A stretch of 64,000 bases of DNA from sequence record LR756502.1. One strand, given 5' to 3'. The notes below the pieces were generated by a model. That model ran no database searches and was not told the DNA's origin. It saw nothing but the letters and a program-made list of their open reading frames with translations. Positions 5,732 through 29,012 of this stretch are shown here, one piece after another (within the stretch, counting starts at the first letter, position 1; every line of letters begins with the position of its first letter). Position numbers and translations under genes: made by a program.

Positions 5732-5740
5732 TAATATATA
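5732..5740 (+). promoter_or_regulatory. Putative late promoter TAATATATA
   Basis: Exact motif upstream of ATG 5747. Confidence 0.65.
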
Positions 5741-5746: not shown

Positions 5747-6082
5747 ATGGACACAAGGCACTATTTGAATTGGGAGGAAGTTAACTTCACTTGGGAAAGT
5801 GTTGATATGTTATGGGAAGAGGTTTTTATAGAGATCGAACAGGCTGTAAGAAGGGGTGGTAATGGTGGATATGCTGAATATGTTAAGGGAAATCCTTGGG
5901 ATAAGTTAAGAAGAGATATAGGTGAAGAAAAAACTAAGAAAGTAATAAAGCTTTACTGTAAAGTAAATGGAATAGACTATGAAAAGGTTTTAGAAAGTGG
6001 TACCGATATTAAAGTATCGGTTAATAGTTTCGAGAGATTTGTTAAAGAGGGAATTAGTGTGAAAGTTAATTTAAAAAATTAA
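5747..6082 (+). CDS. Hypothetical protein with Trp-spaced N-terminus
   Basis: 111-aa ORF with W-x6-W-x6-W pattern; late motif upstream. Confidence 0.7.
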
Positions 6083-6088
6083 TATATA
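6080..6088 (+). promoter_or_regulatory. Putative late promoter TAATATATA
   Basis: Exact motif upstream of ATG 6093. Confidence 0.65.
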
Positions 6089-9118: not shown

Positions 9119-10534
9119 TTATAAAAAGTCTACTTGAGCTCTTTCTCTAATCTCCTCAAATGTCCATTCTTGTTTAATATATCCATCTAAGAATACCTCA
9201 ACCAACTCATCACCAACCTCATCATGAGAGTGTTCAATAGTTAACCCATTAACCAATTTCAAACGACCAGCCTTTGACTTCTTGAACGATTGTACTCGTT
9301 CACCATTCTCATTAATTTCAATTGGATTCTTACGAATATCAACTTCTTCCCCATTGATTGTTATAGAAGAACATTTGAAAGCGAACTTCTGTGTATCTCT
9401 ATCTACTTTTTGAAGTAACGCCCCACCCATACCAAATGCTATATTTTCTACTGAAAATCCTTCCTCAACCATCATGTCTAGAACATCAATTATAGATTCA
9501 TAATTAACACCATCACCTTGGATTACTCTAACGTGTGGGTCAATAACTTTGAAACCTTTATCATTGATAACTCCACCAAATTTATCCCAAAGAATATGGA
9601 AAACTTGTCTAAGTGTTTGTACTGGGTCACCACTATCAGGGCGAATTACAAGACGTCCATCACGACTTAGAATTTTATCTCTAAGTTCTGTACCCCAATA
9701 ATCTTTACACGCTCTAATGATATCAAATGAGTCTGATACACAAGCTACAAGTCCTGTTGGATATTGGTCTAACATATTCTCCATAGCCTTTACTTCAAAT
9801 GGTTCTGTCCAAGAAGTAATAGTTGAGTGCTCTGATGCTGGTATGGAGAACGCCAACATATTATCTGTGTTATAAAAGTCTTGTGCTAATAAGATACCTG
9901 ATACTGTATCTGTTCCTAAGAAGTTTACAATATGAGCTGAACAACCAATTGCTGATGATTCAACTGAACTAACTCCACGGAATCCGAAATCATGTAACAT
10001 GAAAGATACGATGTTTTTAATTCCATCACCATCATATGACGTAGTTTTCTTTAAGTAAGAAACAAGTAATTTCTTAATCTCTCTTGATAGAGTACCAACT
10101 GTTGTTGGATACCATACTTGTAATAAGATACTTTCTAGGTAGTTTGTTAACCAAGGAACTTCTGGGTCAGTATTCTCAACTGTAATAAGAACATTGCTTG
10201 TTTTTACGGAAGTCCCTTCTGGAACTGCTTTGATTCTAACTGGTAATCGACCATCGTGTTTTTCAAGGATGTGCATCCATCCCTCTAAATTGAAATGTCC
10301 TGGTCCTAAGTGAGCGTCATAGAATTTATGAGCTTTTGCAATTTTTTCAAGTGTTACAACCTTACCTACTAAATACTGCTTGATGAAGTATTGAAGACCA
10401 TAGAACATGGTGTTGTCAAATTTACCCCCTCTTGATTCTAGGTAAGAGTAAACCTTCGATGTACCTTTTGGGTATTGCTTCCAGTGTGTTGGCTTGTAAC
10501 TGTCTGTTAGCATTAAAATGTTGTCGTTAAACAT
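9119..10534 (-). CDS. nadV: Nicotinamide phosphoribosyltransferase (Nampt/NadV)
   Basis: LTDSYKPTHWKQYP, LHDFGFRG, SIPASEHS, VSDSFD, VIRPDSGDP, IQGDG, FGMGGALLQ and RDTQKFAFK motifs. Confidence 0.95.
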   Translation of the reverse strand: MFNDNILMLTDSYKPTHWKQYPKGTSKVYSYLESRGGKFDNTMFYGLQYFIKQYLVGKVVTLEKIAKAHKFYDAHLGPGHFNLEGWMHILEKHDGRLPVRIKAVPEGTSVKTSNVLITVENTDPEVPWLTNYLESILLQVWYPTTVGTLSREIKKLLVSYLKKTTSYDGDGIKNIVSFMLHDFGFRGVSSVESSAIGCSAHIVNFLGTDTVSGILLAQDFYNTDNMLAFSIPASEHSTITSWTEPFEVKAMENMLDQYPTGLVACVSDSFDIIRACKDYWGTELRDKILSRDGRLVIRPDSGDPVQTLRQVFHILWDKFGGVINDKGFKVIDPHVRVIQGDGVNYESIIDVLDMMVEEGFSVENIAFGMGGALLQKVDRDTQKFAFKCSSITINGEEVDIRKNPIEINENGERVQSFKKSKAGRLKLVNGLTIEHSHDEVGDELVEVFLDGYIKQEWTFEEIRERAQVDFL

Positions 10535-10608
10535 ATATTTTAGTTTTAGTTATTGAAAAATCTTTCTTAAATGTGATTCCTTATGTAATCATAGGTTGTT
10601 CCCATATA

Positions 10609-10639
10609 CAAATATACGAATTATTTCGTAATTAACAAA
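10609..10639 (-). promoter_or_regulatory. Bacteroidota sigma-A type promoter for nadV
   Basis: TTTG-N19-TATATTTG (consensus TTTG-N19/21-TAnnTTTG). Confidence 0.7.
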
Positions 10640-11581
10640 TTATTTTAACTCACTTTTAATGAGTAATTTCATTAGTTCTTGGTGTTCTTGTACCATACCA
10701 ACTTCTGTTGTGTGGTTATCATTCATGTCATACCAAGTGTCTCTAATCCACTTTAGGTCAAACCATCTAAGTTCTGAAATCTCTTGTGATGGTTCAATTC
10801 TACCAAACATAAACTTACACTTGAATAATATAGTCGTAATCTTATCTTCTTCTGATCGGTATCTCCAATCATCTACCCTAAGTGATGTTATATACTTAAT
10901 ATCACCTATTTCAGCTTGGCCAGCTTCATCCATGAACTTTCTTTTTGCAGTATCTTCATATGAAGCGTCTTTTGGGTGAGCAAACCCACCAATAAACCTC
11001 CATCCATCTTCATTCGGTTTTTTTGCTAATAGTACCTTTGTACCATCTTCATTAAATGGTGCTATATCTATACTTGGGTGCACCTTTGGATATTGGTTAT
11101 ATGATTGGTAAATAACACCTGCTCTAAAATCAGATGACTCTTTTACCTGTTCAGACACTATCTTTCTAACCTCTGTTCCTGAAACAAAGGTGTATTGGTC
11201 AAGCTCTTTGCAATCAAATAAACCTCCACCTTTTTTATAGTATGGTATGAAAGAGTCTCTCCCACCATACATCAATACATCACCAATTGGATATATCTCT
11301 CTTATTCTCTTATCCATCTCTAGTGACCATCTTTTATCATCACCGAAATCAGGTAATGCAATAATGGTAATGTCTGGATAGTGCTTTTGAATCATTCTCT
11401 TTCTTGTTTCAAAGTCAAGAGGATTCTTTTTTGTACTTGATGTTCTTGTGACACCAAGAAATAAAATAACTTTTTTGTGGTTATCGACTACCTGTTTAAT
11501 AACGTAGTGATGTGCGTCATGTAGTTCGTGAACTTGAAATCTGCCAACGAGTGCTCCGATTGAATAACTTTTAGTTTCCAT
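10640..11581 (-). CDS. nadM: Bifunctional NMN adenylyltransferase / Nudix (NadM-Nudix, NatV-like) with a degenerate Nudix box
   Basis: VGRFQ..HDAH, KKNPLDFETRK and SGTEVR NMNAT motifs; C-terminal Nudix-like GGFAHPKDASYEDTAKRKFMDEAG; adjacent to nadV. Confidence 0.88.
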   Translation of the reverse strand: METKSYSIGALVGRFQVHELHDAHHYVIKQVVDNHKKVILFLGVTRTSSTKKNPLDFETRKRMIQKHYPDITIIALPDFGDDKRWSLEMDKRIREIYPIGDVLMYGGRDSFIPYYKKGGGLFDCKELDQYTFVSGTEVRKIVSEQVKESSDFRAGVIYQSYNQYPKVHPSIDIAPFNEDGTKVLLAKKPNEDGWRFIGGFAHPKDASYEDTAKRKFMDEAGQAEIGDIKYITSLRVDDWRYRSEEDKITTILFKCKFMFGRIEPSQEISELRWFDLKWIRDTWYDMNDNHTTEVGMVQEHQELMKLLIKSELK

Positions 11582-12407: not shown

Positions 12408-12416
12408 TAATATATA
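12408..12416 (+). promoter_or_regulatory. Putative late promoter TAATATATA
   Basis: Exact motif upstream of ATG 12423. Confidence 0.65.
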
Positions 12417-12422: not shown

Positions 12423-14378
12423 ATGTGTAAAAATCATAATCATAATCATAGTAAAAAAATCTTCAAATTTGAAGATTTTGTTAATGAGAGCAAGGTAATA
12501 GAATTACTGATAGAGGGAAACCTTACAGCTTCTGATAAATTTCTTAAAAAACTATCCTTGATAAGAAGTAATCCTATCGCGGATACACTGTATAATGCCT
12601 TCCTAAATAAGACACATATTGATAAAGACTTATCTCAAAATTGGGTAGATGTTAGTGATAAAGAAGATGTTGTGACTTTTATGGCGGATAGAGGTGCTAG
12701 TAGGTTAGATAATAAACCAGAGTCTATTTTTTCTGCAAATAGGAATGAAATAAAGGTTGGTAGATTTGCTAGAGCTATACTAACTGAACTTGGACAAACT
12801 GTTGCTGATAAAGACATTGAAGTATTTGTTAATACATATAAAGCATCAAACGTGGATACAACTAAAAAGTTTGAGATGGTTAGTGGTAAAGATATTAAAA
12901 AATATTACCACGAGGATAGCTATTCTTCCGATAAAGGCACACTCGGTGATTCCTGTATGAGATATGATAACTGTGAAAAATACTTTAAGATATATACTAA
13001 AAATCCAAAATATTGTCAATTATTGGTGTATTTGGATGACAATGGTAAGGTATTGGGAAGAGCCCTTGTTTGGAAACTTAAAAAGAAAAAGCTTTTTAAT
13101 ATAAAGGACCAGAGTAAGTATGATTGTCCAGCTATTTATTTTATGGATAGGGTTTATACAACATCTGATTCTGATGTTGTTAAATTTACTAACCTGGCTA
13201 AAGAAAAAGGATGGTTATATAAATGGAAGATGACCGCTGATACAGAGCAAGGTCTTATATTTAGATATAATGATCAAATACTTTTCGGTCAAATAACTGT
13301 CGAATTGGACAAAGTGGAGTTTAGAAACTATCCATTTTTTGATACATTATCATTTTGTGATGGTGATTCTTATATAAGTAACGTTGGTTTAATTGGTGAT
13401 GATGCATTCACTATGTGTAGTACAGAGGGTGAGAGTGAACCATGTTGTGATTGTGATGGAGATGGGTATGATAAGGATAATGATGGAGATTGTAGAGCTT
13501 GTAGTGGTAGTGGTAATATGGATGATCCAAAATGTGGTGGAATGGGTCAGGAAATTTGTATTAAGTGTGATGGGGATGGAAGTATAGTTTGTAAAAAATG
13601 TAATGGAGATGGATCTTATGATTGTCCAAGCTGTAGCGAGGGTGATATTAATTGCGTGAAGTGTGGTGGTAACGGATATAAAGAATGCTCGGTTTGTAAA
13701 GGGACTGGGGATGGAGATCATTGTACAAAATGCAAAGATGGTACTTTGTCTTGTTCAGAATGTGGTGGAAAGCCTGTCACATGTAAGACTTGTAAGGGAT
13801 CTTGTAGTATAGTGAAAAAATGGGGAGTTGGTAAAAGAACAGTGAGTTGTCCAGATTGTGGTGGATTGGGTGTTGGTTTAAGTGGACCTGACTCACAAAC
13901 TGGTTGTAGATGTGACAAATGTTCATGTACTACATTTTCTGATGGTAGTTGGGACTTTTGGAGAAACACAGGAGTTGTTGATTGTGAAGAATGTGATGGT
14001 CTTGGTACTTTACCATGTATAGAATGTAAAGATAAAGAGGGTGGATTTCACATTGGTTGTATAGAATGTGAGGTTTGTGATGGTAATGGTAGTAAGCCTT
14101 GTGAGGTTTGTAAAGGAAATAGATCATATACACATGGTTCAATTGAATGTGAGGTTTGTAAAGGAAATGGTAGTATTGGAGAATGTGATAAATGTAAAGG
14201 ATCCGGATCTCTTGGTAAATGTAAGAACCCATCATGTGATAATGGTAAGGTAACTTGTCTACTGTGTAATGGTAAAGGGGAAGACCTAAGAACGGGTAAA
14301 ATTTTATGCCCATCGTGTACTGGACTACTCGATATATTTAAGGAAGACCTAAAATGTGGTATTTTTACGCTAAAATGA
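12423..14378 (+). CDS. Large protein with ~20 DnaJ-type CxxCxGxG zinc-finger repeats
   Basis: N-half has SCMR..GRALVW..FMDRVY; C-half has about 20 CxxC(xGxG) units; no J domain (no HPD). Confidence 0.85.
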   Translation: MCKNHNHNHSKKIFKFEDFVNESKVIELLIEGNLTASDKFLKKLSLIRSNPIADTLYNAFLNKTHIDKDLSQNWVDVSDKEDVVTFMADRGASRLDNKPESIFSANRNEIKVGRFARAILTELGQTVADKDIEVFVNTYKASNVDTTKKFEMVSGKDIKKYYHEDSYSSDKGTLGDSCMRYDNCEKYFKIYTKNPKYCQLLVYLDDNGKVLGRALVWKLKKKKLFNIKDQSKYDCPAIYFMDRVYTTSDSDVVKFTNLAKEKGWLYKWKMTADTEQGLIFRYNDQILFGQITVELDKVEFRNYPFFDTLSFCDGDSYISNVGLIGDDAFTMCSTEGESEPCCDCDGDGYDKDNDGDCRACSGSGNMDDPKCGGMGQEICIKCDGDGSIVCKKCNGDGSYDCPSCSEGDINCVKCGGNGYKECSVCKGTGDGDHCTKCKDGTLSCSECGGKPVTCKTCKGSCSIVKKWGVGKRTVSCPDCGGLGVGLSGPDSQTGCRCDKCSCTTFSDGSWDFWRNTGVVDCEECDGLGTLPCIECKDKEGGFHIGCIECEVCDGNGSKPCEVCKGNRSYTHGSIECEVCKGNGSIGECDKCKGSGSLGKCKNPSCDNGKVTCLLCNGKGEDLRTGKILCPSCTGLLDIFKEDLKCGIFTLK

Positions 14379-14905: not shown

Positions 14906-15400
14906 CTACTTACCAAGATAATTCATTAACTCAATCATATTCTTTATTGAGTATGATAACGACTCTAAATTTTTAACACTAGCTCTTAAAAACTCCACAT
15001 AAGATTCTATAAGCTCTATACATCTATCATTTTCTCCAATATGAGCATCAATTAGTATTGACTTTTCTCCCATATTTGTCTTTATTCCAAATCCTGTTGC
15101 GTAGAAAATAAATTTGTCCTGACGTAATTTTTTTATTTTTGTAACTTCTCTACTTCTTCTATTTAGGAAATAATTTATTTGTTCATTTATACCCTGTCTA
15201 TATGATAATGCTAAAGATTGTGAATTTAATATTTCTTTTGCATTTGATGGATTGGAAAGATCAACATTCAGTGCCTTGAACAGTGGTTCGATATTTTTAT
15301 TCCAATCTTGTCTTTTCTCATTGAAGAATTCCTCCAATTTATCATTGGTCTCCCTTGTCTTACTTATTCTATCTAACTCTTCTTGATTATATACGTTCAT
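14906..15400 (-). CDS. uvsY: UvsY-like recombination mediator
   Basis: Coiled-coil protein ending YVEFLRASVKNLESLSYSIKNMIELMNYLG, the UvsY C-terminal pattern. Confidence 0.7.
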   Translation of the reverse strand: MNVYNQEELDRISKTRETNDKLEEFFNEKRQDWNKNIEPLFKALNVDLSNPSNAKEILNSQSLALSYRQGINEQINYFLNRRSREVTKIKKLRQDKFIFYATGFGIKTNMGEKSILIDAHIGENDRCIELIESYVEFLRASVKNLESLSYSIKNMIELMNYLGK

Positions 15401-15450
15401 ATGCTTTGTATTTTTCTATGTCTATTTTATAGTTTGAATGTTTGTTTGTT

Positions 15451-15459
15451 TAATATATA
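15451..15459 (+). promoter_or_regulatory. Putative late promoter TAATATATA
   Basis: Exact motif upstream of ATG 15481. Confidence 0.65.
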
Positions 15460-15480
15460 TCAAAAAATATATAAAGTATT

Positions 15481-16215
15481 ATGAATATTACAATCGATAT
15501 ATTAAAAAGTACAGTATCCAAACTAGGATATAAATGGTATACGGATCGTCCGAATCTTATAGGAATTAGAACTACATTGCAAATACCCGATGTCTTTAAT
15601 GATGTTTTCTGTCTTGTTTGGAAGCAAGATGTTATACCAACTGGTTTAACTGATATTAAAAGGCAGGAATGGTTGAATAAAAATCTTTTCTATGGAAAAA
15701 CTGGATTACCTTTATCTGTTGATGGTGATTTTGGATCAAATTCTCAATTTGCAATGGATCAATATAATCAAGTTGTTGGTGAGGAAAGATTGAAATTTTG
15801 GGTTATAACAACTGACCCTGGTACATTTTGGCTAAATAATCCATATAGCTCACTTGGAACTGCTGTTTTGAAACCTGGTCAATGGGTAGATTGTTGGTCA
15901 TTAGGATTACACCAAGGAAAAGCTGACCATCCAGCTTTTGTGCAAGTGGGTAAAGTTACTGTCTTTAGAGATAATGATAAGGATTCTATTTCAGAAGAGC
16001 AAGGAAAAGAAGAATCTGGGCTATTTGGAATAAACATTCACAGATCAAATGCAACTAGCAAATCAATGGTCATAGGGAAATGGTCGGCTGGATGTATGGT
16101 TTTTCAGACAAAGTCTGATCATGATCAATTAAGATCCATATGTGATCAGTATAAATCTAAAGTAAATAATAGATTTACATATACCCTTTTAAGAGAAAAA
16201 GAGTTATCAATATAA
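15481..16215 (+). CDS. Putative cell-wall peptidase (YkuD/L,D-transpeptidase-like) with inserted peptidoglycan-binding motif
   Basis: GINIH...WSAGC catalytic His/Cys motif; internal VDGDFGSNSQFAMDQYNQ resembles PG_binding_1. Confidence 0.65.
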   Translation: MNITIDILKSTVSKLGYKWYTDRPNLIGIRTTLQIPDVFNDVFCLVWKQDVIPTGLTDIKRQEWLNKNLFYGKTGLPLSVDGDFGSNSQFAMDQYNQVVGEERLKFWVITTDPGTFWLNNPYSSLGTAVLKPGQWVDCWSLGLHQGKADHPAFVQVGKVTVFRDNDKDSISEEQGKEESGLFGINIHRSNATSKSMVIGKWSAGCMVFQTKSDHDQLRSICDQYKSKVNNRFTYTLLREKELSI

Positions 16216-16668
16216 TGGTTGGGTATATTTATTTACTAAAATGTCCTCTAACAGAGGAAGTTAAATATATTGGGTTAACAAGAAATTATAAGAAAAGAAA
16301 AAGTCAACATAGATGCTATAGCGAATCTATGTCTAAGAACCATCAATATAATAAGTGGAAAGATACTCTAAAACTATCTGGAAAGAGACCTATTTTTGAA
16401 ATTATTGAAGAGAACTAGTGAATCTCTAAAGGGTGAGAATAACCCAAATTACAAAGGGGTAAATTGTACTAGGGAATGGAAAGAAAGTCAGTCCAAGTCA
16501 CAAAGCAAAACTCCACTATTAATATATGATGGTGATATCTTAATCAAAGAGTTTTCTAATTCTAAAGAGGCTGCTCAATTTTTAAATTGTTCTGAATCTA
16601 ACATAAGGGAATGTAAGAGAAATGGATGGCTTATAAAAAGGAAATATAAAATAGTTAAAAAATATTAA
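16215..16668 (+). pseudogene. Split GIY-YIG homing endonuclease (catalytic fragment plus NUMOD DNA-binding fragment)
   Basis: 16215..16418 has GYIYLL...KYIGLT...R; 16396..16668 in the +1 frame has KGENNPNY and FSNSKEAAQFL..SESNI. Confidence 0.7.
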
Positions 16669-16674
16669 TATATA
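16666..16674 (+). promoter_or_regulatory. Putative late promoter TAATATATA
   Basis: Exact motif 4 nt upstream of ATG 16679. Confidence 0.65.
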
Positions 16675-16678
16675 GTGT

Positions 16679-17845
16679 ATGATTAACAATTTTATAAAGT
16701 TCATAAATGAAGAGATAACTATAGGAAAAATGGATCCTAAAACACTCTCTACTATTAAGGATAACTTAGTTGAGAGATTAGATGAGTATAAGGATTATAT
16801 ACTTGGTTCTATATCTTATGATATTAAGACCAATAAGGTAGTATATAATGATGACTTTGATAATATTGACCTAAGTATTATAATGAGAGAGCTTATAAAT
16901 GAGTTTTCTCAGGACATTATCGATGATCTAAATGTGGATACATTTCTAAGAAAAATACATCAAATAATTGATTTGAGGAAAAGAAATACCAAAAAGCAGA
17001 TTCGTGATGAGTTTGTTGAGTATTACATTTCATTAAATAATAGGATTGAAAGAATGTATAAGAGAATAAACCAGCCTGAACAATATAAGGATTTTGGTGA
17101 GGAAGAAGATGAAACATCTATTCTTGGAAGAAAAGAATATGAATCAGAAAAATATGACATCCAAGTTGAGTTAATGAAACTTCAAGAGTGGGTAATGAAA
17201 AATAATAAAAGAATAGCTATTGTTTTTGAAGGTAGAGATGCTGCTGGAAAAGGATCTACAATAAAGAGATTTACAGAATATTTGAATCCTAAGGGGTTTA
17301 AGGTTGTTGCTCTTGGTGTTCCAACTGATGAAGAAAGAAAAGACTGGTTTGGTAGATATGAAAAGCACTTACCTAAAGATGGTGAGATAGTTTTCTTTGA
17401 TAGATCTTGGTATAATAGATCAGTTGTTGAACCAGCTATGGGTTATTGCACAGAGGATCAATATATGGAATTCATGGAAAACGTTGTTGATTGGGAAGAA
17501 GAAATGATGGATGATGGATTGATATTAATTAAGTTGTGGTTCTCTATTACAAAGGAGAAGCAATTACTTAGATTTGAAGCTAGAAAGAAAAGCCCACTAA
17601 AATATTGGAAATTTTCACCAAATGATGCTAAGGTAATTGATAAATGGGATATAATAACTAAATATAAAAATCAAATGTTTAATAATGCATCTAGTTCTAA
17701 ATCTCCTTGGATTATAATAAATTCAAATGATAAGAGAATAGGCATGTTGAATGCTATGAGGTATGTTCTTTGGGACATTGACTATGATAACAAGGATGAG
17801 TCTGTTAGTGAGTGGTACCCAGAGGTTGTGCATGTGATAAAATAG
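16679..17845 (+). CDS. ppk2: Polyphosphate kinase 2 with ~150-aa N-terminal extension
   Basis: FEGRDAAGKGSTIKR Walker A, FFDRSWYNR Walker B, LIKLWFSITKEKQLLRF and WKFSPND motifs. Confidence 0.93.
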   Translation: MINNFIKFINEEITIGKMDPKTLSTIKDNLVERLDEYKDYILGSISYDIKTNKVVYNDDFDNIDLSIIMRELINEFSQDIIDDLNVDTFLRKIHQIIDLRKRNTKKQIRDEFVEYYISLNNRIERMYKRINQPEQYKDFGEEEDETSILGRKEYESEKYDIQVELMKLQEWVMKNNKRIAIVFEGRDAAGKGSTIKRFTEYLNPKGFKVVALGVPTDEERKDWFGRYEKHLPKDGEIVFFDRSWYNRSVVEPAMGYCTEDQYMEFMENVVDWEEEMMDDGLILIKLWFSITKEKQLLRFEARKKSPLKYWKFSPNDAKVIDKWDIITKYKNQMFNNASSSKSPWIIINSNDKRIGMLNAMRYVLWDIDYDNKDESVSEWYPEVVHVIK

Positions 17846-17854
17846 AATAAAATT

Positions 17855-18322
17855 ATGGAAAATATAAAATCATTTGATAGTTTTAATGAGAAAAAGTGGA
17901 TTAAAGATGCTATTGAGCATCCAGGATCACTTAGAAGATCATTAAAAAAGAAGAAAGGTGAGAAGATCACTAAGTCTGAAATAGGGTCAGAGATATCTAA
18001 ACTAAAAAAGAAAGATAAGGATAAAGACAAACCAGGACTTCAACTTGGTAATAGAGATAAGACTAAGTATAAGAAACTTGTTCTTGCCAAAACTCTTAAA
18101 TCTATGAAAGAAAGTAATGAAGGAGACACACAAAACTATATGTTTTTCAGTAATCTACAAACTATTAAGAGGTTGGTTGATGATATGTTAGAAATGGATG
18201 AAAAAGAGGTAGATGATATGTTATCAGATGGTCATGGTTGGGCCACAGATCATATAGCTACATCGAAAGATGACGTTGAAGAGGTTTATAACTTCCTCAG
18301 AGGAACTAGTGATTCTAAATAG
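17855..18322 (+). CDS. Hypothetical basic/acidic protein with CTS-like N-terminus
   Basis: MENIKSFDSFNE; KWIKDAIEHPGSLR basic module; NYMFFSNL...GHGWATDHI module. Confidence 0.75.
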   Translation: MENIKSFDSFNEKKWIKDAIEHPGSLRRSLKKKKGEKITKSEIGSEISKLKKKDKDKDKPGLQLGNRDKTKYKKLVLAKTLKSMKESNEGDTQNYMFFSNLQTIKRLVDDMLEMDEKEVDDMLSDGHGWATDHIATSKDDVEEVYNFLRGTSDSK

Positions 18323-18360
18323 AATGAGTGAAGAAATAAATCTAAAAAAAATTAAAAAAA

Positions 18361-18948
18361 ATGAAATACCTAAAACGATTTAATGAAGAACTTGATCCAA
18401 AGACTTATATGTCTGCTGGTAAATCCTTACAAAGTAAGGGTCATGTGGCCAGGGGTCAGAAGTTAATTGATTATTCAAATTCAAATTCAAAAATGTCGGG
18501 TATTGCCGATGAGTTTGAATTCACTTCAAGTGGTAAAAAATATTTAGCAAAATGGGACTATACAAAGGGTGTATTTGAGACAGCTGATGGGAAAAGAATA
18601 TACTTAAAGGGTACTAATCTATTTTGTAATTCATACCCAATAAGACGAGGGGAGTCTCATCCACACGCATATGTTACTAATCGTAAGGATGCTGTTAATC
18701 TACTTAAATTTTTGAAAACAGTTATTACTACTCAACATCCTCGCGCCTTACCTGTTATGCCAACTATAAATGATTTATATCAAGAGGATGCTCCTAAAAG
18801 TTTGGCAATACCGAAAGATACTAACACAGTGGATAATTACTATGATAGTGGATCACTTAATAATAAAAAGGTATCAAAATCAAACTGGTTTAAGAGAAAT
18901 ATTTATCCAGGAAGTACAAAATCTGGGGATGATGGTGCTGATTTTTAA
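18361..18948 (+). CDS. Hypothetical protein with CTS-like N-terminus
   Basis: Begins MKYLKRFNEE; 195 aa. Confidence 0.75.
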   Translation: MKYLKRFNEELDPKTYMSAGKSLQSKGHVARGQKLIDYSNSNSKMSGIADEFEFTSSGKKYLAKWDYTKGVFETADGKRIYLKGTNLFCNSYPIRRGESHPHAYVTNRKDAVNLLKFLKTVITTQHPRALPVMPTINDLYQEDAPKSLAIPKDTNTVDNYYDSGSLNNKKVSKSNWFKRNIYPGSTKSGDDGADF

Positions 18949-18952
18949 TAGA

Positions 18953-19918
18953 CTATGCCTTTTTATCAAATAGATAAAGGTCATATATCGCATTACCTTT
19001 TACTCTTTTAATGTTTTTTAGTGTTTGTCCGGTTGTTGAGTCAAGTACCTTATATACACCAAGGTTAATGCCTTTTTCATTTAAGACCTTTACTGTATTT
19101 CCTGGTTGACCAAGTGCTCCTAATATAGCAATATATTTATTTCCATAAATGCTCTTCAAAAAAGATACCCTAAGGTTAGCAATATCTTTTGAGTTATTTA
19201 TATATGCATTTTCCATTGGTTTTGTAAGATCTAATTGGGTATCTGTTGTCTTTACTCTAACAGTAACGAACTTTCTCTCCTGATCATCCAATGTTACTTC
19301 TTCTCTATCTTGAATTTTATTTGCCTTAACTAAATTTTGTTGATTCTTCCTTATTTCATTGAAGTCAGCACGCGCGATAATACCACCTCTCATACCTTTA
19401 TCATTCATATTATAACCAGATGGTGGTAATCTATAAAAAGAACCTGTAAATGTAATTGATAGTATTCTATCTGCTCTAAAAAGTCTCCATATCTTATTTA
19501 TGTGTCTTTTTTGAGATACTGACCAACCATTTAAGTGCCATCCTCTAATTAAAACTTTACCTTGTGTTGATCTACCAAGTACCATAGGGTAAATTACCCT
19601 TTCATGACCCGCAAAGTGCTTATCTTTTTCGCCTTTATAGTTTAGTAGGAATATCATTCCATATTTTATGGCTTTTATTAGAATATCGTCTGTGTATTTA
19701 ACTGGTTCATTGATTGGAATATTTGCAATCTCTTTAGCGTCCTTTATATTAAACCTAGGTATGTACTCATTATCTTCAATTAAATTGAAATTCTCGTTTT
19801 TAATAACATACTCAACGACCTTCTTATTAAAAGAACTTGGCCAGATTGGATCTGATTTTCTTGCATCCTCTAGTTCAGCTCTAATAGCATTCCTTTTTAT
19901 AAAACTTGGTTTATCCAT
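18953..19918 (-). CDS. WYL-domain-like protein (no obvious HTH)
   Basis: LNYKG...ERVIYPMVLG...RGWH...WRLFRADRILSI matches the WYL core Y..R...P....W...R.FR.DRI. Confidence 0.65.
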   Translation of the reverse strand: MDKPSFIKRNAIRAELEDARKSDPIWPSSFNKKVVEYVIKNENFNLIEDNEYIPRFNIKDAKEIANIPINEPVKYTDDILIKAIKYGMIFLLNYKGEKDKHFAGHERVIYPMVLGRSTQGKVLIRGWHLNGWSVSQKRHINKIWRLFRADRILSITFTGSFYRLPPSGYNMNDKGMRGGIIARADFNEIRKNQQNLVKANKIQDREEVTLDDQERKFVTVRVKTTDTQLDLTKPMENAYINNSKDIANLRVSFLKSIYGNKYIAILGALGQPGNTVKVLNEKGINLGVYKVLDSTTGQTLKNIKRVKGNAIYDLYLFDKKA

Positions 19919-19923
19919 CTAAT

Positions 19924-19932
19924 TATATATTA
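19924..19932 (-). promoter_or_regulatory. Putative late promoter TAATATATA
   Basis: Exact motif upstream of ATG 19918. Confidence 0.65.
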
Positions 19933-19952
19933 ATAATCAATGGTTCATTTTA

Positions 19953-20678
19953 TTATTTACTGATCCTTATGTTTGTTAAATCAATAGCTCTTTGATTTAT
20001 ATCACATCCGATAAATTTCCTATTAAGTTCTTTACAACAAAGAGCGGTAGTTCCTGATCCAAGGTAAAAATCAGCTATTGTGTCTCCTTCATCAGATGAT
20101 GATTTAATTATTCTTTCTACTAAAGCTTTTGGTTTTTGAGTATCATATCCAACTCTTTCTTTCTTATCATTCTGACCAAGAATATTCATTTGCCAAACAT
20201 CACCAATTACCTTACCGTCTTTATGATAGTATTTCTCTTTCTCATATCCTCTTGGTGCACTTAATGAGTATGGTTCTCTTTGTGGATTAAATTTATATTT
20301 ATCTGTTTTAGTGTATCGATATATTATATCATGTCTTTTGCCAAAGTCATTCTTCTTTCTTGGTGCTGTATTATATGACCATATAATTTCATTTCTCATA
20401 TTCTCATATCCAAATATATCATCTAGTATTAATCTTACCCAGTGGTTTATCTTGGTGTCCATTTGAAGATATATTGTTCCTGTATCTTTTAATACACGAT
20501 GCATTTCCTTTATTCTTGGAATGTAATGATCTTCTATATCGGACTTAATTGGTTTAAGGTCTTGATAGTCTTTAAATTTTCTACCAGTCCCAAATAATAT
20601 ATCACAGTATATCAAATCAATTGACTTATCCTCGATTGATTTTAGGAATTCTAAATTATCTTTACATTCAATTCTCAT
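19953..20678 (-). CDS. DNA N6-adenine/N4-cytosine methyltransferase (beta class)
   Basis: IDLIYCDILF (motif IV variant), LKDTGTIY, TQKPKALVERII and DFYLGSGTT (motif I). Confidence 0.85.
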   Translation of the reverse strand: MRIECKDNLEFLKSIEDKSIDLIYCDILFGTGRKFKDYQDLKPIKSDIEDHYIPRIKEMHRVLKDTGTIYLQMDTKINHWVRLILDDIFGYENMRNEIIWSYNTAPRKKNDFGKRHDIIYRYTKTDKYKFNPQREPYSLSAPRGYEKEKYYHKDGKVIGDVWQMNILGQNDKKERVGYDTQKPKALVERIIKSSSDEGDTIADFYLGSGTTALCCKELNRKFIGCDINQRAIDLTNIRISK

Positions 20679-25424: not shown

Positions 25425-26432
25425 CTATACATTGAAATTAGTACTAACTACATCAATGCATGATTGATATCTTTCGTTCCAATCAACTCCACCAATTTCA
25501 ATGAATTCACATCCTCTATCAATTAGTTCCTTCTTAATTACTTCATAATGTTCCAATCTGGAATCTAAGAAACTTCTAGTACCATCTTGAACCGATTTAC
25601 AATCAGGCATTAGTAATAAATATAGATCATATTTCTTTTTAGTATTTAAAATATTTAGGAACCAATCCTCTACTTGTAGATATTCGTCTGGACAATACAT
25701 CTTTGTGAATATGTATGTAGTAATATCCTCTGTGTCACAAAATATAAGTTTATTTGATTGTAGAAGTAACCAATCTTCAAGAGATTGTCTACCCCTTGAT
25801 ATAGGCATAAAGTCATCAATCGTTACCTTATTACCATTCGCCTCATATATTAGTCTACCATATTCAACCACAAAATTTGTATTGAAGTAAGTTGCGAGCT
25901 TTTTAGTCATTGTTGATTTACCAACAGACTCTGGTCCCATAATAGCAATTCTTTTTACAAAGTGAGGTCTAACCTGCTCGGGAATATATTCCCAATTACT
26001 AAATGTTTCGGTTCTTACTTTTGTCCCTGATGTGGGAAATGTCTTTCTGTCCAAATCCACAATATGATGTTTTATTCCAAGTTTCTCTGAATAAGGATCT
26101 CCGTAGTTTTCTGATGTGAATATTACATCGAGATCTGGTGGGCAATTATTCCTGGCTATTCCTACCCATATATCCCAAAAGTTCGGGTCCTCTTCTGGTA
26201 CTTGAGGTACCTCTTCTTTGAAGTTAATTATATTTAATCTCTTCTCACCCTTATAGATTTCTTTCAACCAATTAAATCTATCATCTCCTTCTATCGGTTC
26301 ATTTTTAAGAGAACATACCAATAGTGTAACTATCTCGGCGTTTTCTAACGCAGTGTTTATTAGAAATAAATGACCTTTGTGTGGTGGTAAAAACTTACCT
26401 ACAATTAATCCACTTTTATACTTTTTCTCCAT
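25425..26432 (-). CDS. nadR: NadR-type bifunctional NMN adenylyltransferase / ribosylnicotinamide kinase (no HTH)
   Basis: VGKFLPPHKGH (HxGH), SGTKVR, IAIMGPESVGKST (Walker A), EYGR and FCDT motifs. Confidence 0.93.
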   Translation of the reverse strand: MEKKYKSGLIVGKFLPPHKGHLFLINTALENAEIVTLLVCSLKNEPIEGDDRFNWLKEIYKGEKRLNIINFKEEVPQVPEEDPNFWDIWVGIARNNCPPDLDVIFTSENYGDPYSEKLGIKHHIVDLDRKTFPTSGTKVRTETFSNWEYIPEQVRPHFVKRIAIMGPESVGKSTMTKKLATYFNTNFVVEYGRLIYEANGNKVTIDDFMPISRGRQSLEDWLLLQSNKLIFCDTEDITTYIFTKMYCPDEYLQVEDWFLNILNTKKKYDLYLLLMPDCKSVQDGTRSFLDSRLEHYEVIKKELIDRGCEFIEIGGVDWNERYQSCIDVVSTNFNV

Positions 26433-26950
26433 TTTAAAATACCTGATATTGATAACAAAAGGAATATAAAGTATATTCCAGATGAAAGGTATAGTTCATT
26501 AACATAAAAGAACCATACAAATATTATATCCGCAATTATCCAATATATCCAATTTTCTATTTTCCTGTAAGCTAGAAGAATCATCGCCATTATACTCAAC
26601 GATGTTGTTAATCCATCGAAGTATGGCATTCTACCACCAATTTTCATCATTGATAGTGATATAATCATTGTTAATATTACTGTTGATCCGAATATAGCTA
26701 CTCTATTATGAGTATCTATGTACTTTATTGGATATTTGGATGGCTTTTTCCAGTTATACCAACCAAGAATAGATTGAGCAATGAATATAAATTGTAAATA
26801 CATATTACCCCATATTTGGTTTTTGCCAAATAGTATCATGTAGAATATGATTCCAATAATACCAAATGGCCAACACCAAATATTGTTTTTTACTGTTAAT
26901 ATTACAGATAGTAAACTAAATATAACAGCGATTATCTCGATAGTATCCAT
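26405..26950 (-). CDS. pnuC: PnuC-family nicotinamide riboside/vitamin transporter
   Basis: Multi-pass; KNNIWCWPFGII, DGLTTSLS and ENWIYWIIADI (WxxWxxxD) motifs. Confidence 0.92.
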   Translation of the reverse strand: MDTIEIIAVIFSLLSVILTVKNNIWCWPFGIIGIIFYMILFGKNQIWGNMYLQFIFIAQSILGWYNWKKPSKYPIKYIDTHNRVAIFGSTVILTMIISLSMMKIGGRMPYFDGLTTSLSIMAMILLAYRKIENWIYWIIADIIFVWFFYVNELYLSSGIYFIFLLLSISGILKWRKSIKVD

Positions 26951-29001
26951 TAGAATTTATATGATAAACTTACATAATAGTTTCTTGGAGATCCAACATA
27001 ATATGATGATGTTGGTCCATTTCCATTAAATCCAACATATCCGGATGTGTAATATTTTTGACTTGTTAGGTTATTTACTGTTAATTTGAAACACACATTT
27101 TTAATATTTACTTGTGTGAAGATATCTAAAAGATAAAACTCCGGAGTAACAAACTTATCATTCTGTGTATTATCTAAGTATGACTTAGATACATATCTTC
27201 CATTTACTCCAATAGTAATATATTTGTAACTATAGGACATTGATGTATTGCTTATAATATTTGGTGTTAGTAAAGGAGATACGTTTTTGTATGTTATACT
27301 ATCAAAGTCCGTTGTGTATTCCTTTATTTTATTATATGAGTAGTTTACGTTCTGTGAGAACACAAACCCTTTTATTGGAGTCCAAAGTAGGTCAAACTCC
27401 ACACCACTTCTGAAAGAGCTTTTGACATTTTTTCTTAGAGGTAGTCCTATATAAGACATTTGTCCTATCTGAGCAATCTCATTCTTGAAGTCCATATAGT
27501 ATCCATTCAGATCAACTGATAACTTCTTTGATTTATATGAGACACCAATCTCAAAGTCAGCAACTTTCTCTGATTTAATATTTCGTATATCAATAGTGTC
27601 AACACCAAAACCAACATATTGATATTTGTTTATAGGTGAGACATCATCATATCCATTAAATAAGTCATTTCTTGTTGGTTCTCGATGATTTACACCAATT
27701 GATGTGTATATAGATAGGTTATCATTCTGATTGAATCTAAATCCGCCCTTTGGATTAAAGAAAGTGTAGTCTATATTATCTAATCTGTTTTTATTGGATG
27801 TATCTCCCGATGCGTATATAAATGTAACCGATCTATATTGTAAATCAATAAATGAAACCAACTTCTTTGTTAGATTGTAGTGTAGTTTCATAAATGATGA
27901 TATTTCGGTCTTATATCCTGTGTTATTATATAAATTGGTTCCGAAGTTTGGATAGTTGGACATCATGTGTGTTCTATCATAAGAGCTGGTATTTATTCCG
28001 AATTGGAACTTAACTCTATCCTTTGAATAATTAAATGTTGACATTATTCCGTAGAAGTTTGACTTCAATTTAAACTTATACATGTCATTTGTTGATGTAA
28101 TTGTATCTGGGAATAAAATATCATAATTACCATCAAGACTATTATAGAAAATAGAAGTGTTTAGGTATGAGTTTTTATCAATGTTAGATATCCACTGTAG
28201 TGATATTAAATGTTGATTAAATTTATCTTGCTCTTCCTTTGTTAGGTAGTTTGTTCTAGGGTCAACTTTAATATCTTCAATATTTGTGGCTAGATACGCC
28301 ATTCCATTATTAGACTGACCAGAGAATGCTGTTAGTTTAAGTATATTTTTATCACCATAGTATCCAGCTGACGCGAAGAATGTCCTTGAATCATTGAATG
28401 AGTTATATCTATACCCATCAGATCCAATCATTGAATATCGACCATATACAGCGAACTTATTTTTAATACCGGAGTTATATCCAACCGAGTTTCGGTATGT
28501 ATTATATGATCCATATCCTGTTTCAAGTGATGTGTAGTTTGAGTCTGTTAGATTTGGTCCCTCAAAATTAATAGAACCTCCATAAGACGATGACCCATAT
28601 GATGATGTTCCAATACCTCTTTGTATTTGTACTGAGTTTAGGTTCGATCCAAAGTCTGGATAGTTTGAGAAATATACTCCTTGGTCTTCAGGCTCATTTA
28701 ATGGAATTCCATTTAGAGTCATATTTATCCTTGTTTGGTCAATTCCTCTTATTCTAAAATATGTATACGAATTATATAAACCATTATCGGAGTTGGCTGT
28801 GATTGATGGTGTTTTTGATAGTATATAAGACATATCTTGTCCAGTATATTCCCTTTGAATATCAACCTTTTTTATGGTCTTTTGAGTAACTGGTGTCGAT
28901 TGATCAGCTCTTACTGATACAATCTGTACTTCCTTTAGAGTATCTTGTCCAAATGATAGAAGTGTTGTTATTACAAATAATATGGATAATAGTTTTTTCA
29001 T
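26950..29001 (-). CDS. TonB-dependent outer-membrane receptor
   Basis: Signal peptide; LKEVQIV TonB-box-like segment; plug motifs IRGIDQTRINMTLNGIPLN and QIQRG..S..YG...GGSINF; ends YVSLSYKF (beta signal). Confidence 0.93.
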   Translation of the reverse strand: MKKLLSILFVITTLLSFGQDTLKEVQIVSVRADQSTPVTQKTIKKVDIQREYTGQDMSYILSKTPSITANSDNGLYNSYTYFRIRGIDQTRINMTLNGIPLNEPEDQGVYFSNYPDFGSNLNSVQIQRGIGTSSYGSSSYGGSINFEGPNLTDSNYTSLETGYGSYNTYRNSVGYNSGIKNKFAVYGRYSMIGSDGYRYNSFNDSRTFFASAGYYGDKNILKLTAFSGQSNNGMAYLATNIEDIKVDPRTNYLTKEEQDKFNQHLISLQWISNIDKNSYLNTSIFYNSLDGNYDILFPDTITSTNDMYKFKLKSNFYGIMSTFNYSKDRVKFQFGINTSSYDRTHMMSNYPNFGTNLYNNTGYKTEISSFMKLHYNLTKKLVSFIDLQYRSVTFIYASGDTSNKNRLDNIDYTFFNPKGGFRFNQNDNLSIYTSIGVNHREPTRNDLFNGYDDVSPINKYQYVGFGVDTIDIRNIKSEKVADFEIGVSYKSKKLSVDLNGYYMDFKNEIAQIGQMSYIGLPLRKNVKSSFRSGVEFDLLWTPIKGFVFSQNVNYSYNKIKEYTTDFDSITYKNVSPLLTPNIISNTSMSYSYKYITIGVNGRYVSKSYLDNTQNDKFVTPEFYLLDIFTQVNIKNVCFKLTVNNLTSQKYYTSGYVGFNGNGPTSSYYVGSPRNYYVSLSYKF

Positions 29002-29012
29002 GTTTATTATTT

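What the first reader, a model, noticed from the sequence alone, without database searches (positions are those of the whole stretch)
16666..17845. Polyphosphate kinase 2 fused to a tagged N-terminal extension and expressed late
Seen: an intact PPK2 core preceded by ~150 extra aa that begin with the CTS-like MINNFIKFINEE, 4 nt after TAATATATA. Known: single-domain PPK2 enzymes make GTP/ATP from NDP using polyphosphate. Inference: late timing plus the tag suggests packaging and injection, so host polyP could be turned into NTPs (or the polyP stress signal removed) before phage genes are expressed. This could counter nucleotide-depleting defences.
Basis: partly seen in the sequence, partly recalled or inferred. 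Interest (0 to 1): 0.7.

Follow-up and report, generated by a model that had tools for sequence, protein, structure and literature searches.

The report
Late-expressed phage polyphosphate kinase fusion
One of the largest known phages carries an apparently intact polyphosphate-to-NTP kinase fused to a phage-specific front domain, and the gene has the same promoter box as the virion genes, so it is probably made late; whether it is packed into the particle remains untested.

Summary
Window 16679-17845 (+) encodes a 388-aa protein. Residues ~148-377 are a class I PPK2 with every catalytic residue in place. Before them lie about 147 residues with no known family or fold. TAATATATA sits at 16666-16674, 4 nt before the ATG.

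The window is part of LR756502.1, a 642-kb uncultured 'Mahaphage' predicted to infect Bacteroidetes.

The box is a real, oriented, intergenic element. Its core precedes 10 of 14 identified morphogenesis and lysis genes but only 1 of 21 replication, recombination and metabolic genes. 'Late' is therefore supported by association, not measured.

The 'tag' is real but looser than stated. About 151 of 906 predicted genes start with a sharp peptide motif, MKHLKKYNEFES. The PPK2 start fails a fixed-register model of it. It does match an N-terminus-specific variant, [FY]xxF[IVLM]NE (10 genes against 0.2 expected).

The front domain also exists as a stand-alone ~120-aa gene in related phages, always behind a conserved ~300-aa gene that carries the box or a variant of it, so the PPK2 core looks like an add-on.

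The head genes are T4-like, but the motif does not resemble T4's capsid-targeting sequences.

Packaging and injection are plausible (about 0.3) but untested. The anti-depletion idea is weak.

The parts
16666..16674 (+). TAATATATA box, a late-type promoter element 4 nt before the ATG. It overlaps the TAA stop of the upstream homing-endonuclease ORF fragment.
   Evidence: The box is enriched, intergenic and oriented. Its core AATATATA precedes the MCP, portal, TerL, head protease, baseplate hub, tail fibre and lysozyme genes, and only 1 of 14 replication/recombination genes (gp41-like, 50 nt up) and none of 7 NAD-salvage/methylase genes.
16679..17845 (+). CDS of 388 aa (46.6 kDa): an N-terminal module fused to a class I polyphosphate kinase 2. 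The stop codon is at 17843-17845.
16679..16714 (+). Residues 1-12, MINNFIKFINEE: a conserved, unpacked N-terminal peptide that is a variant of the phage's proteome-wide N-terminal motif.
   Evidence: pLDDT is below 50. F8 and E11 are invariant and F5 nearly so in 14 orthologues. The pattern [FY]xxF[IVLM]NE starts within the first 15 aa in 10 genes against 0.2 expected. It is not a hit to the canonical fixed-register model.
16715..17071 (+). Residues 13-131: a phage-specific helical domain with one beta-hairpin. No known family or fold.
   Evidence: AlphaFold2 on 54 homologues gave mean pLDDT 81. No Foldseek hit below E 0.3 in PDB or BFVD. There are 66 representative homologues. Two of the ~116-124-aa homologues were looked up and are complete stand-alone genes.
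17072..17134 (+). Residues 132-152: an acidic, disordered linker (pI 4.25).
   Evidence: pLDDT is 34-37. Composition. Its length varies among orthologues.
17135..17842 (+). Residues 153-388: the PPK2 catalytic domain. Walker A GRDAAGKG is at 17231-17254, Walker B DRS at 17399-17407, the class I Asn246 at 17414-17416, and the lid residues are R298, R302 and K308.
   Evidence: The alignment to FtPPK2, read against PMC4748334 and PMC8776046. These residues are invariant or nearly so in the orthologues.
17855..18322 (+). Downstream gene of 155 aa, 9 nt after the PPK2 stop. It starts with the N-terminal motif (MENIKSFDSFNE) and is probably co-transcribed.
   Evidence: motif score 14.7; phrog_15706, function unknown. 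In another phage a homologue is fused directly behind the front domain (P0028).
18361..18948 (+). Second downstream gene of 195 aa with the canonical N-terminal motif (MKYLKRFNEELD). It is the last gene of the co-oriented run.
   Evidence: (score 22.6).
18953..19918 (-). Conserved gene of about 300 aa, function unknown. In related phages it sits immediately upstream of the front-domain gene. It has its own TAATATATA at 19924-19932 (-).
   Evidence: 67-74% identity to the gene preceding stand-alone front-domain genes in L016 and L018. In LR745206 it directly precedes the PPK2 fusion. The box or a variant of it precedes the gene in all four phages.

Best explanation
The gene encodes a catalytically competent class I polyphosphate kinase 2, which uses polyP to convert NDP to NTP, typically GDP and ADP. 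A subclade of Mahaphage-type huge phages grafted this core onto the C-terminus of a pre-existing phage protein.

The protein has four parts:
- a conserved, flexible 12-residue N-terminal peptide, which is a variant of a motif that opens about one gene in six in this phage;
- a helical domain of about 120 residues with no known fold;
- an acidic disordered linker;
- the PPK2 core.

It is transcribed from the phage's structural-gene-type promoter box. The box sits so close to the ATG that the mRNA should be leaderless or nearly so. Two small motif-bearing genes are probably co-transcribed with it.

The most likely function is to draw on the host's polyphosphate store to regenerate GTP and ATP during the late phase, when a 642-kb genome has to be packaged and virions assembled. 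The front module would tether the enzyme to a late phage partner or structure.

Shown: domain architecture, catalytic residues, conservation, the promoter-class association, and the fusion history.
Inferred: enzyme direction, timing, leaderless mRNA, and what the front module binds.
For: - PPK2 identity and class.
- Residue mapping to FtPPK2 (with PMC4748334 and PMC8776046): D62/K66 = D187/K191; D117/R118 = D241/R242; the class I Asn = N246; R174/R178/K184 = R298/R302/K308.
- About 20 fusion orthologues at 80-97% identity over the PPK2 core come from independent metagenomes. One lies on a 617-kb contig.
- Two stand-alone 122-aa versions of the front domain were checked and are complete genes. 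They sit 9-10 nt behind a conserved ~300-aa gene, and LR745206 has that same gene followed by the fusion.
- Structure: floppy residues 1-12, a confident helical domain, and a disordered linker.
- Promoter box: enrichment, orientation and bimodal spacing of 4-8 and 18-28 nt. It precedes 10 of 14 morphogenesis/lysis genes against 1 of 21 others, p = 5e-5. The box or a close variant is present upstream of the orthologues.
- N-terminal motif: a variant class enriched about 50-fold at N-termini, and 9 of its 11 non-canonical carriers have the box.
Against: - No expression, activity or localisation data exist, because the phage is uncultured.
- Two of the five residues proposed for FtPPK2's polyP-binding patch differ (H76 to Y201, R232 to M356; with PMC4748334). 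PolyP affinity could therefore differ.
- Some class I PPK2s run mainly towards polyP synthesis (PMC8776046), so the direction is not certain.
- No gp55-like late sigma factor was found, so the factor that reads the box is unknown.
- 'Late' rests on guilt by association.
- The partner of the front domain is unknown, and its fold matched nothing.
Confidence: 0.6

Rival explanations
1. The N-terminal peptide, and perhaps the whole front domain, acts as a capsid-targeting propeptide. The fusion is loaded into the prohead core, trimmed by the T4-like head protease, and injected with the DNA. Host polyP is then turned into NTPs, or polyP signalling is removed, before any phage gene is expressed.
For: - The head module is T4-like: the MCP is in the Gp23 family (3.7e-28), the portal in the Gp20 family (1.3e-57), and there is a head maturation protease (phrog_207, 6e-28, with a weak Peptidase_S77 match). 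A further 12 T4 core homologues were found.
- In T4, N-terminal propeptides of 10-19 aa load otherwise unrelated proteins into the head. Foreign proteins fused behind IPIII are packaged and injected (PMC9026906).
- Giant-phage ejection proteins carry N-terminal propeptides of 111-254 aa (PMC10052503).
- Motif genes are strongly linked to the structural-gene promoter box: 64 of 151 against 90 of 755.
- The motif is selected as a peptide, not as RNA.
- Stand-alone front-domain proteins are small and basic (pI about 9), like internal head proteins.
- I9-N10-E11 fits an (L/I)-x-E cleavage site.
Against: - The motif model does not recognise T4 IPI, IPII or IPIII, so there is no homology to a proven CTS.
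- The PPK2 start is only a variant of the motif.
- About 150 different cargo proteins would be unprecedented.
- Motif proteins are on average acidic, and a handful continue into hydrophobic, signal-like segments.
- (L/I)xE is too degenerate to count as evidence: it occurs 5 times in this protein.
- The Peptidase_S77 match is below Pfam's cut-off.
Confidence: 0.3
2. The enzyme runs mainly in the synthetic direction, making polyP from ATP or GTP late in infection. Possible purposes are sequestering phosphate, acting as a chaperone or scaffold, or altering host stress signalling. NTP regeneration would not be its main role.
For: Some class I PPK2s (C. glutamicum, P. aeruginosa PA2428) favour or strongly support polyP synthesis, depending on the metal ion and on ATP regeneration (PMC8776046). 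Survey papers interpret viral ppk genes as aiding polyP accumulation (PMC13188868).
Against: - The closest characterised relatives (FtPPK2, SmPPK2, PA0141) favour NDP phosphorylation, by about 75-fold for PA0141 (PMC8776046).
- A lytic phage late in infection needs NTPs, not stored phosphate.
- No PPX or PPK1 partner was seen near the gene.
Confidence: 0.07
3. The N-terminal resemblance and the box are incidental. The gene would be an ordinary cytoplasmic auxiliary metabolic gene whose front domain only serves oligomerisation or regulation of the kinase, with no targeting role.
For: - Cellular PPK2s also carry N-terminal extensions. In S. meliloti PPK2 the extension covers the lid module (PMC4748334).
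- NAD-salvage genes lie within 10 kb.
- The canonical-motif model scores the PPK2 start at background.
Against: - The front domain is an independent gene in related phages that have no PPK2 next to it, so it did not evolve as a PPK2 regulator.
- It is separated from the core by a disordered linker.
- The first 12 residues are conserved although they are unpacked.
- The FxxF[IV]NE variant is N-terminus-specific in this genome.
- The neighbouring NAD genes lack the box.
Confidence: 0.15

Closest known systems
Francisella tularensis PPK2 (FtPPK2; PDB 4YEG, 5LL0, 5LLB), a class I single-domain polyphosphate kinase 2
   Same: Alignment over 230 residues at E 2e-79. Walker A D62/K66, Walker B D117/R118, the class I Asn, the lid R174/R178 (R-x3-R) and K184 are all conserved. 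The hit also passes the TIGR03707 equivalog cut-off.
   Different: The phage protein has about 125 more N-terminal residues than FtPPK2, forming a separate domain plus a linker. Two polyP-patch residues differ (H76 to Y, R232 to M). It is encoded by a phage and sits behind a structural-gene-type promoter box.
Phage T4 internal proteins (IPI, IPII, IPIII, Alt) with N-terminal capsid targeting sequences, and engineered IPIII/CTS fusions that deliver foreign enzymes
   Same: Both involve a short N-terminal peptide on otherwise unrelated proteins, genes linked to the late/structural promoter class, and a T4-type head module (Gp20, Gp23 and protease homologues). An enzyme fused behind a small phage protein mirrors the IPIII-fusion design (PMC9026906).
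   Different: There is no sequence similarity to T4's CTSs. About 150 carriers here compare with a handful in T4. The carriers are mostly acidic. Cleavage and packaging have not been shown.
Ejection proteins of giant phages (SPN3US, phiKZ, 201phi2-1) with long N-terminal propeptides removed by the prohead protease
   Same: These are large-genome phages in which enzymes are carried in the head. Their N-terminal propeptides of 111-254 residues are comparable in length to the 152-residue front part here (PMC10052503).
   Different: They have a different head-gene lineage and a different cleavage motif, and there is no homology to the front domain.
Virus-encoded ppk2 genes reported as auxiliary metabolic genes, and single-domain PPK2 genes in other phage records (for example Moraxella phage Mcat6 and gut phage contigs)
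   Same: A PPK2 domain encoded on a viral genome (PMC13188868, which also cites Li et al. 2025, Water Res).
   Different: Those hits align only to residues ~145-385, so they lack the front module. No promoter class or targeting motif has been described for them.
T4-type late promoters: a single AT-rich -10-like element read by gp55, with no -35 element
   Same: The box is a single short AT-rich element with no conserved upstream element. It lies upstream of morphogenesis and lysis genes and, with one exception, not of replication genes.
   Different: The sequence is TAATATATA rather than T4's late consensus. No gp55 or gp45 homologue was detected. Two spacing classes exist, and the main one implies leaderless mRNAs.

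Membership tests
Polyphosphate kinase 2, class I (PF03976 / TIGR03707) | PPK2 domain detected above the curated thresholds | tested here: met
   PF03976 scores 258.7 bits against a cut-off of 22.3. TIGR03707 scores 304.7 against 301.8.
Polyphosphate kinase 2, class I (PF03976 / TIGR03707) | Walker A loop with the catalytic Asp and Lys (FtPPK2 D62, K66) | tested here: met
   GRDAAGKG at residues 185-192, with D187 and K191 aligned to D62 and K66 (PMC4748334).
Polyphosphate kinase 2, class I (PF03976 / TIGR03707) | Walker B DRS tripeptide (FtPPK2 D117, R118) | tested here: met
   D241-R242-S243, invariant in 14 orthologues.
Polyphosphate kinase 2, class I (PF03976 / TIGR03707) | Class-specific residue after Walker B: Asn in class I, Gly in class II, Glu in class III | tested here: met
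   N246 in DRSWYNR corresponds to SmPPK2 N153 and Ft position 122 (PMC8776046).
Polyphosphate kinase 2, class I (PF03976 / TIGR03707) | Lid-loop basic residues R-x3-R plus Lys (FtPPK2 R174, R178, K184) | tested here: met
   R298, R302 and K308.
Polyphosphate kinase 2, class I (PF03976 / TIGR03707) | PolyP-dependent NDP phosphorylation activity | not testable with these tools
   This needs a recombinant enzyme assay.
T4-type capsid targeting sequence (CTS) cargo | Short propeptide (10-19 aa) at the extreme N-terminus, shared by unrelated proteins | tested here: met
   A 12-residue motif opens 151 of 906 genes. The PPK2 carries the FxxF[IV]NE variant.
T4-type capsid targeting sequence (CTS) cargo | Sequence resemblance to the proven T4 CTSs | tested here: not met
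   The motif PSSM ranks T4 IPIII, IPII and IPI at 28, 37 and 39 of 154 T4 N-termini, all with negative scores.
T4-type capsid targeting sequence (CTS) cargo | A gp21-type prohead protease and a T4-type head core in the same genome | tested here: inconclusive
   The Gp23-family MCP and Gp20-family portal are clear. The protease hits phrog_207 (6e-28), but Peptidase_S77 reaches only E 4.6e-4, below the cut-off. Scaffold and core proteins were not identified.
T4-type capsid targeting sequence (CTS) cargo | Processing site after Glu, (L/I)-x-E, at the end of the peptide | tested here: inconclusive
   I9-N10-E11 fits, but the pattern occurs 5 times in the protein and is too degenerate to count.
T4-type capsid targeting sequence (CTS) cargo | Protein present in the mature virion and delivered to the host | not testable with these tools
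   The phage is uncultured, so this needs particle proteomics.
Late (structural-class) phage promoter | A short, oriented, intergenic element enriched upstream of genes | tested here: met
   23 copies against 6.1 expected in the window. 182 of 211 copies lie in the 9% of the genome that is non-coding. 157 upstream regions carry it in sense orientation against 71 in antisense.
Late (structural-class) phage promoter | Precedes morphogenesis and lysis genes and not replication genes | tested here: met
   10 of 14 against 1 of 21, Fisher p = 5e-5.
Late (structural-class) phage promoter | A dedicated late sigma factor (gp55-like) in the genome | tested here: not met
   phmmer and jackhmmer with T4 gp55 found nothing in the 906 predicted proteins. 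gp55 diverges fast, so this is weak negative evidence.
Late (structural-class) phage promoter | Transcripts start at the box and accumulate late | not testable with these tools
   This needs 5'-end mapping and a time course.

The most novel reading that the evidence does not exclude
The largest known phages may run a mass cargo-loading system. A 12-residue N-terminal peptide (MKHLKKYNEFES and variants such as FxxFINEE) would mark about 150 proteins, one gene in six, for loading into a T4-like prohead. These genes are transcribed from leaderless structural-class promoters. The PPK2 fusion would then be a natural 'IPIII-style' construct that delivers a polyphosphate-powered NTP generator into the host together with the DNA.
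Probability: 0.3. Interest if true: 0.85.

Novelty: new variant of a known kind. Interest (0 to 1): 0.6.

Why it matters
PPK2 genes on viral contigs have so far only been counted in surveys. This case has a defined architecture, a promoter class and a fusion history, so it gives a concrete hypothesis to test: a huge phage taps the host's polyphosphate store for NTPs when demand peaks, or on entry.

The context matters more than the enzyme itself. Three features are linked:
- a peptide-level N-terminal motif on about 16% of the genes of a 642-kb phage;
- a promoter box placed 4-8 nt from the ATG, which implies leaderless late mRNAs;
- a T4-like head module.

If the motif is a loading signal, it would explain what much of the 'dark' coding capacity of huge phages is for. 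It would also provide a portable tag for packaging proteins into capsids. If it is something else, it is still an unexplained sorting or recognition signal of unusual scale.

Tried and rejected
- Fixed-register PSSM and gapped HMM of the canonical motif. The PPK2 start scores at background (-12.8; 2.0 bits, a score reached by 9% of internal Met 25-mers). I first read this as 'not tagged'. I revised that after the register-free test and after seeing canonical starts in homologues.
- RNA-level explanation of the motif (a downstream box or recombination cassette). Rejected, because synonymous codons vary freely at motif positions: His CAT 47% / CAC 53%, Lys5 AAA 58% / AAG 42%, Glu GAA about 60%.
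- Homology to T4's CTS. Rejected.
- Fold or family of the front domain. Foldseek against PDB and BFVD found nothing below E 0.3, and a PDB profile search hit only the PPK2 part. The genome holds no paralogue of the domain.
- Identity of the ~300-aa partner gene. No Pfam, PHROG or PDB hit.
- A Bacteroidetes host-type -7 box (TAnnTTTG) as the 'early' counterpart. It shows no orientation bias (111 sense against 101 antisense), so nothing is claimed.
- gp55 or gp45 late-transcription homologues. Not found.
- Argument against cargo from membrane segments. This is weak: only 1 of 151 motif proteins passes a TM threshold, and about 5 have Gly/Ala-rich hydrophobic stretches.
- Generic sigma-70 and terminator scan of 15300-20100. 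At shuffle level, so uninformative.
- Origin of the PPK2 core. The list was swamped by two-domain marine PPK2s, so no donor lineage could be named.
- Literature string search for the box and the motif. Nothing relevant.
Full report
**Source.** The window is identical to LR756502.1 positions 124001-188000. This is a 642,428-bp uncultured phage, one of the four largest curated genomes of Al-Shayeb et al. 2020. It belongs to the 'Mahaphage' clade and is predicted to infect Bacteroidetes (PMC7162821). G+C content is 33% and the window contains no N.

**The observation.** ORF 16679..17845 (+) encodes 388 aa beginning MINNFIKFINEE.
- Pfam PPK2 covers residues 151-374 (E 5.9e-77).
- The class I equivalog TIGR03707 is passed at 304.7 bits against 301.8.
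- The best solved relative is Francisella PPK2, aligned over residues 148-377 (E 2e-79).

I read that alignment against the published residue roles (PMC4748334; PMC8776046). All of the following are present, and all are invariant or nearly so in 14 orthologues:
- Walker A D187/K191 (FtPPK2 D62/K66);
- Walker B D241/R242 (D117/R118);
- the class I signature N246;
- lid residues R298/R302/K308 (R174/R178/K184).

Two residues of the proposed polyP patch differ (H76 to Y201, R232 to M356). TAATATATA lies at 16666-16674, 4 nt before the ATG.

**The extension.**
- Residues 1-147 match no Pfam family. A PDB profile search hit only the PPK2 part.
- A search of 1.8 billion representative proteins with residues 1-150 found 66 relatives.
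- A word-indexed search restricted to proteins of similar length found only PPK2 fusions of 384-388 aa.
- A core-region search added more fusions at 80-97% identity. One lies on a 617-kb contig.
- Many of the 66 are fragments, but a distinct group of 116-124 aa have natural-looking ends. Two of them (P0056 and P0040) were looked up and are complete genes.
- In contigs L016 and L018-L021 these stand-alone genes sit 9-10 nt behind a gene of about 300 aa. That gene is 67-74% identical to window gene 18953-19918 (-).
- In LR745206 the same 300-aa gene is followed directly by the PPK2 fusion.

The front part is therefore an older phage gene, and the PPK2 core was added behind it in one subclade. 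This genome holds no second copy of the domain.

AlphaFold2 with 54 homologues gave mean pLDDT 81:
- residues 1-12 are unpacked (pLDDT below 50);
- residues 20-131 form a helical domain with one hairpin;
- residues 132-152 are a disordered acidic linker.

Foldseek found nothing in PDB or BFVD below E 0.3. Stand-alone versions of the domain are basic (pI about 9), whereas the fused one has pI 5.5.

**The promoter box.**
- The window has 23 TAATATATA copies against 6.1 expected.
- I fetched the whole genome in 50-kb pieces and made a crude call of 906 genes.
- 182 of 211 copies lie in the 9% of the genome that is non-coding. 154 genes have a copy within 60 nt upstream.
- The distance to the ATG is bimodal: 4-8 nt for 97 genes (the commonest value is 4, as for PPK2) and 18-28 nt for about 50 genes.
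- No second conserved element lies upstream of the box.

I annotated 40 large genes with PHROGs, others with Pfam, and further genes by phmmer with T4 proteins. The core AATATATA lies within 60 nt upstream of 10 of 14 morphogenesis or lysis genes. These are the MCP, head protease, portal, TerL, baseplate hub, two tail fibres, the neck protein, an endolysin-like protein and a lysozyme. It does so for only 1 of 21 replication, recombination, NAD-salvage or methylase genes (Fisher p = 5e-5). The sheath gene has a TTTATATATA variant. The orthologous PPK2 genes have TTAATATATA 20 nt upstream in LR745206 and TTTTATATATAG in LR756501.

The box is thus the structural-class promoter element, and PPK2 belongs to that class. 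That it fires late is an inference by analogy with T4-type late promoters. No gp55 homologue was found. A box ending 4 nt before the ATG implies a leaderless or nearly leaderless mRNA, which is also an inference.

**The 'tag'.**
- Position-specific composition of the 906 N-termini shows a sharp motif: M-[KR]-[HY]-[LI]-[KR]-x-[YF]-[NEK]-[EI]-F-E-[SEN].
- An iterated PSSM finds it on 151 genes, with a bimodal score distribution. Only 7 of 2,996 internal Met positions reach the same threshold.
- Synonymous codons vary freely at the conserved positions, so selection acts on the peptide and not on the RNA.
- Motif genes are enriched for the box: 64 of 151 against 90 of 755. In 56 of those 64 the box is at the 4-10-nt spacing.
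- They are mostly small, acidic ORFans. Only about 9 of 146 hit Pfam (lysozyme, T4 RNA ligase 1, SET, HNH, PQ-loop, Toprim, CBM). They rarely have membrane segments.

The PPK2 start does not pass this model: PSSM -12.8, rank 416 of 906, HMM 2.0 bits. A register-free test changes the picture. The pattern [FY]xxF[IVLM]NE starts within the first 15 residues in 10 genes against 0.2 expected from its internal frequency. PPK2 (FIKFINE) is one of them. Nine of the 11 non-canonical carriers of the slightly looser form have the box, and six of those have it at 4-6 nt. In the front-domain family, 17 of 76 members start with the canonical motif and 43 with the variant.

The peptide is conserved although it is unpacked, which is the behaviour of a linear recognition motif. 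I therefore accept that PPK2 carries a variant of a genome-wide N-terminal signal.

**What the signal does.** This is not known.

The capsid-targeting reading has support:
- The head module is T4-like: a Gp23-family MCP, a Gp20-family portal and a head maturation protease. Twelve further T4 core homologues are present.
- T4 loads unrelated proteins through N-terminal propeptides of 10-19 aa, and packages foreign enzymes fused behind IPIII (PMC9026906).
- Giant phages use long propeptides on their ejection proteins (PMC10052503).

It also has weaknesses:
- The motif model does not recognise T4's internal proteins (ranks 28-39 of 154).
- The match to the protease family S77 is below threshold.
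- About 150 cargo species would be without precedent.
- No cleavage or virion data exist.

I put packaging of this PPK2 at about 0.3.

**Function.** The best-supported reading is an active class I PPK2 made with the structural genes. It would convert host polyP plus NDP into NTP when packaging and assembly demand is highest. The front module would tether it to a late partner, possibly the conserved 300-aa protein or the prohead.

This enzyme class re-phosphorylates NDPs and cannot restore nucleotides that have been deaminated, hydrolysed to nucleosides or cleaved. A supply of ATP and GTP that does not depend on membrane potential is a more defensible benefit, though this too is an inference. 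PolyP synthesis as the main direction is possible but less likely (PMC8776046).

**Novelty.** Viral ppk2 genes are already listed in AMG surveys (PMC13188868). Single-domain PPK2s occur in other phage records. The new elements are the fusion to a phage-specific, motif-bearing module, its promoter class, and its evolutionary history. This makes it a new variant of a known kind. The proteome-wide motif and the leaderless spacing class are the more surprising findings. I found no description of them.

Noticed in passing
Whole LR756502.1 (L003-L015). In the window: 14375, 17855, 18361, 21034 (+) and 60905-61276 (-): About 151 of 906 predicted genes begin with a sharply defined 12-residue peptide, MKHLKKYNEFES-like. 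The motif is almost absent at internal Met positions (7 of 2,996) and is conserved at the amino-acid level, not the codon level. Many carriers form tandem arrays of paralogues in the first 100 kb and share a second motif (..DILLEL.DDGF..).
   Followed up: partly
Genome-wide. Window examples: 5690-5698 (-), 5732-5740, 6080-6088, 12408-12416, 16666-16674: The TAATATATA box has two spacing classes to the ATG: 4-8 nt (97 genes) and 18-28 nt (about 50 genes). The first class implies leaderless mRNAs. It is the class used by most motif-bearing genes, whereas the MCP, portal, TerL and protease genes use the longer spacing.
   Followed up: partly
window 9119-11581 (-) and 25425-29543 (-): The phage encodes an NAD salvage and uptake set. 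It comprises NAMPT; a 313-aa protein with a Nudix domain; a NadR-like protein (cytidylyltransferase-like plus AAA_28); a PnuC-family NMN transporter; a TonB-dependent outer-membrane receptor with a plug domain; and a second Nudix protein. None of them has the late box. A phage-borne TonB receptor next to PnuC and NadR is unusual.
   Followed up: partly
window 16215-16668 (+): A GIY-YIG homing endonuclease is split into two overlapping ORFs in different frames: a GIY-YIG part at 16215-16418 and a NUMOD1 part at 16396-16668. It lies between the endolysin-like gene and PPK2. The gene order around PPK2 differs from LR745206, where the endolysin-like gene is inverted and the 300-aa gene lies directly upstream.
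   Followed up: partly
window 12423-14378 (+): A 651-aa protein has a His-rich start (MCKNHNHNHS) followed by KKIFKFEDFVNES, the variant N-terminal motif displaced by 10 residues. Its C-terminal half is very Cys-rich, with CxxCxGxG-type zinc-finger repeats and a weak match to the DnaJ central domain.
   Followed up: no
P0028 (275 aa), P0059 (505 aa), P0036 (280 aa): The front domain has other architectures. In P0028 it is fused directly to a homologue of window gene 17855-18322, with an internal copy of the N-terminal motif at the junction. P0059 carries an extra domain of about 150 aa in front, followed by the front domain and PPK2. P0036 has a long insertion before the PPK2 core.
   Followed up: no
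window 1251-5684 (-) and 33466-50712 (+): A collagen-like tail fibre gene of 1,477 aa lies on the minus strand. On the plus strand there is a run of eight large genes that look like fibre or baseplate genes by position and by their MP/MS N-termini. Several of these have the late box. Only the first gene was checked against PHROGs.
   Followed up: partly
LR756501.1 / LR756503.1 (735 kb); locus L002: The 735-kb phage has two separate PPK2 matches. The copy examined sits among metabolic-looking genes (judged from their sequences, not checked against family libraries), next to a 1,233-aa multi-domain protein whose modules are joined by repeated DPYGEEDW linkers.
   Followed up: no
LR756502.1, whole genome: Homologues of T4 gp17, gp41, gp43, gp44, gp46, gp47, gp61, UvsX, gp3, gp4, gp5 and gp13 are present, together with a Gp20-family portal and a Gp23-family MCP. 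The phage is therefore a distant T4-like myovirus in its core genes. gp55 and gp45 were not detected.
   Followed up: partly
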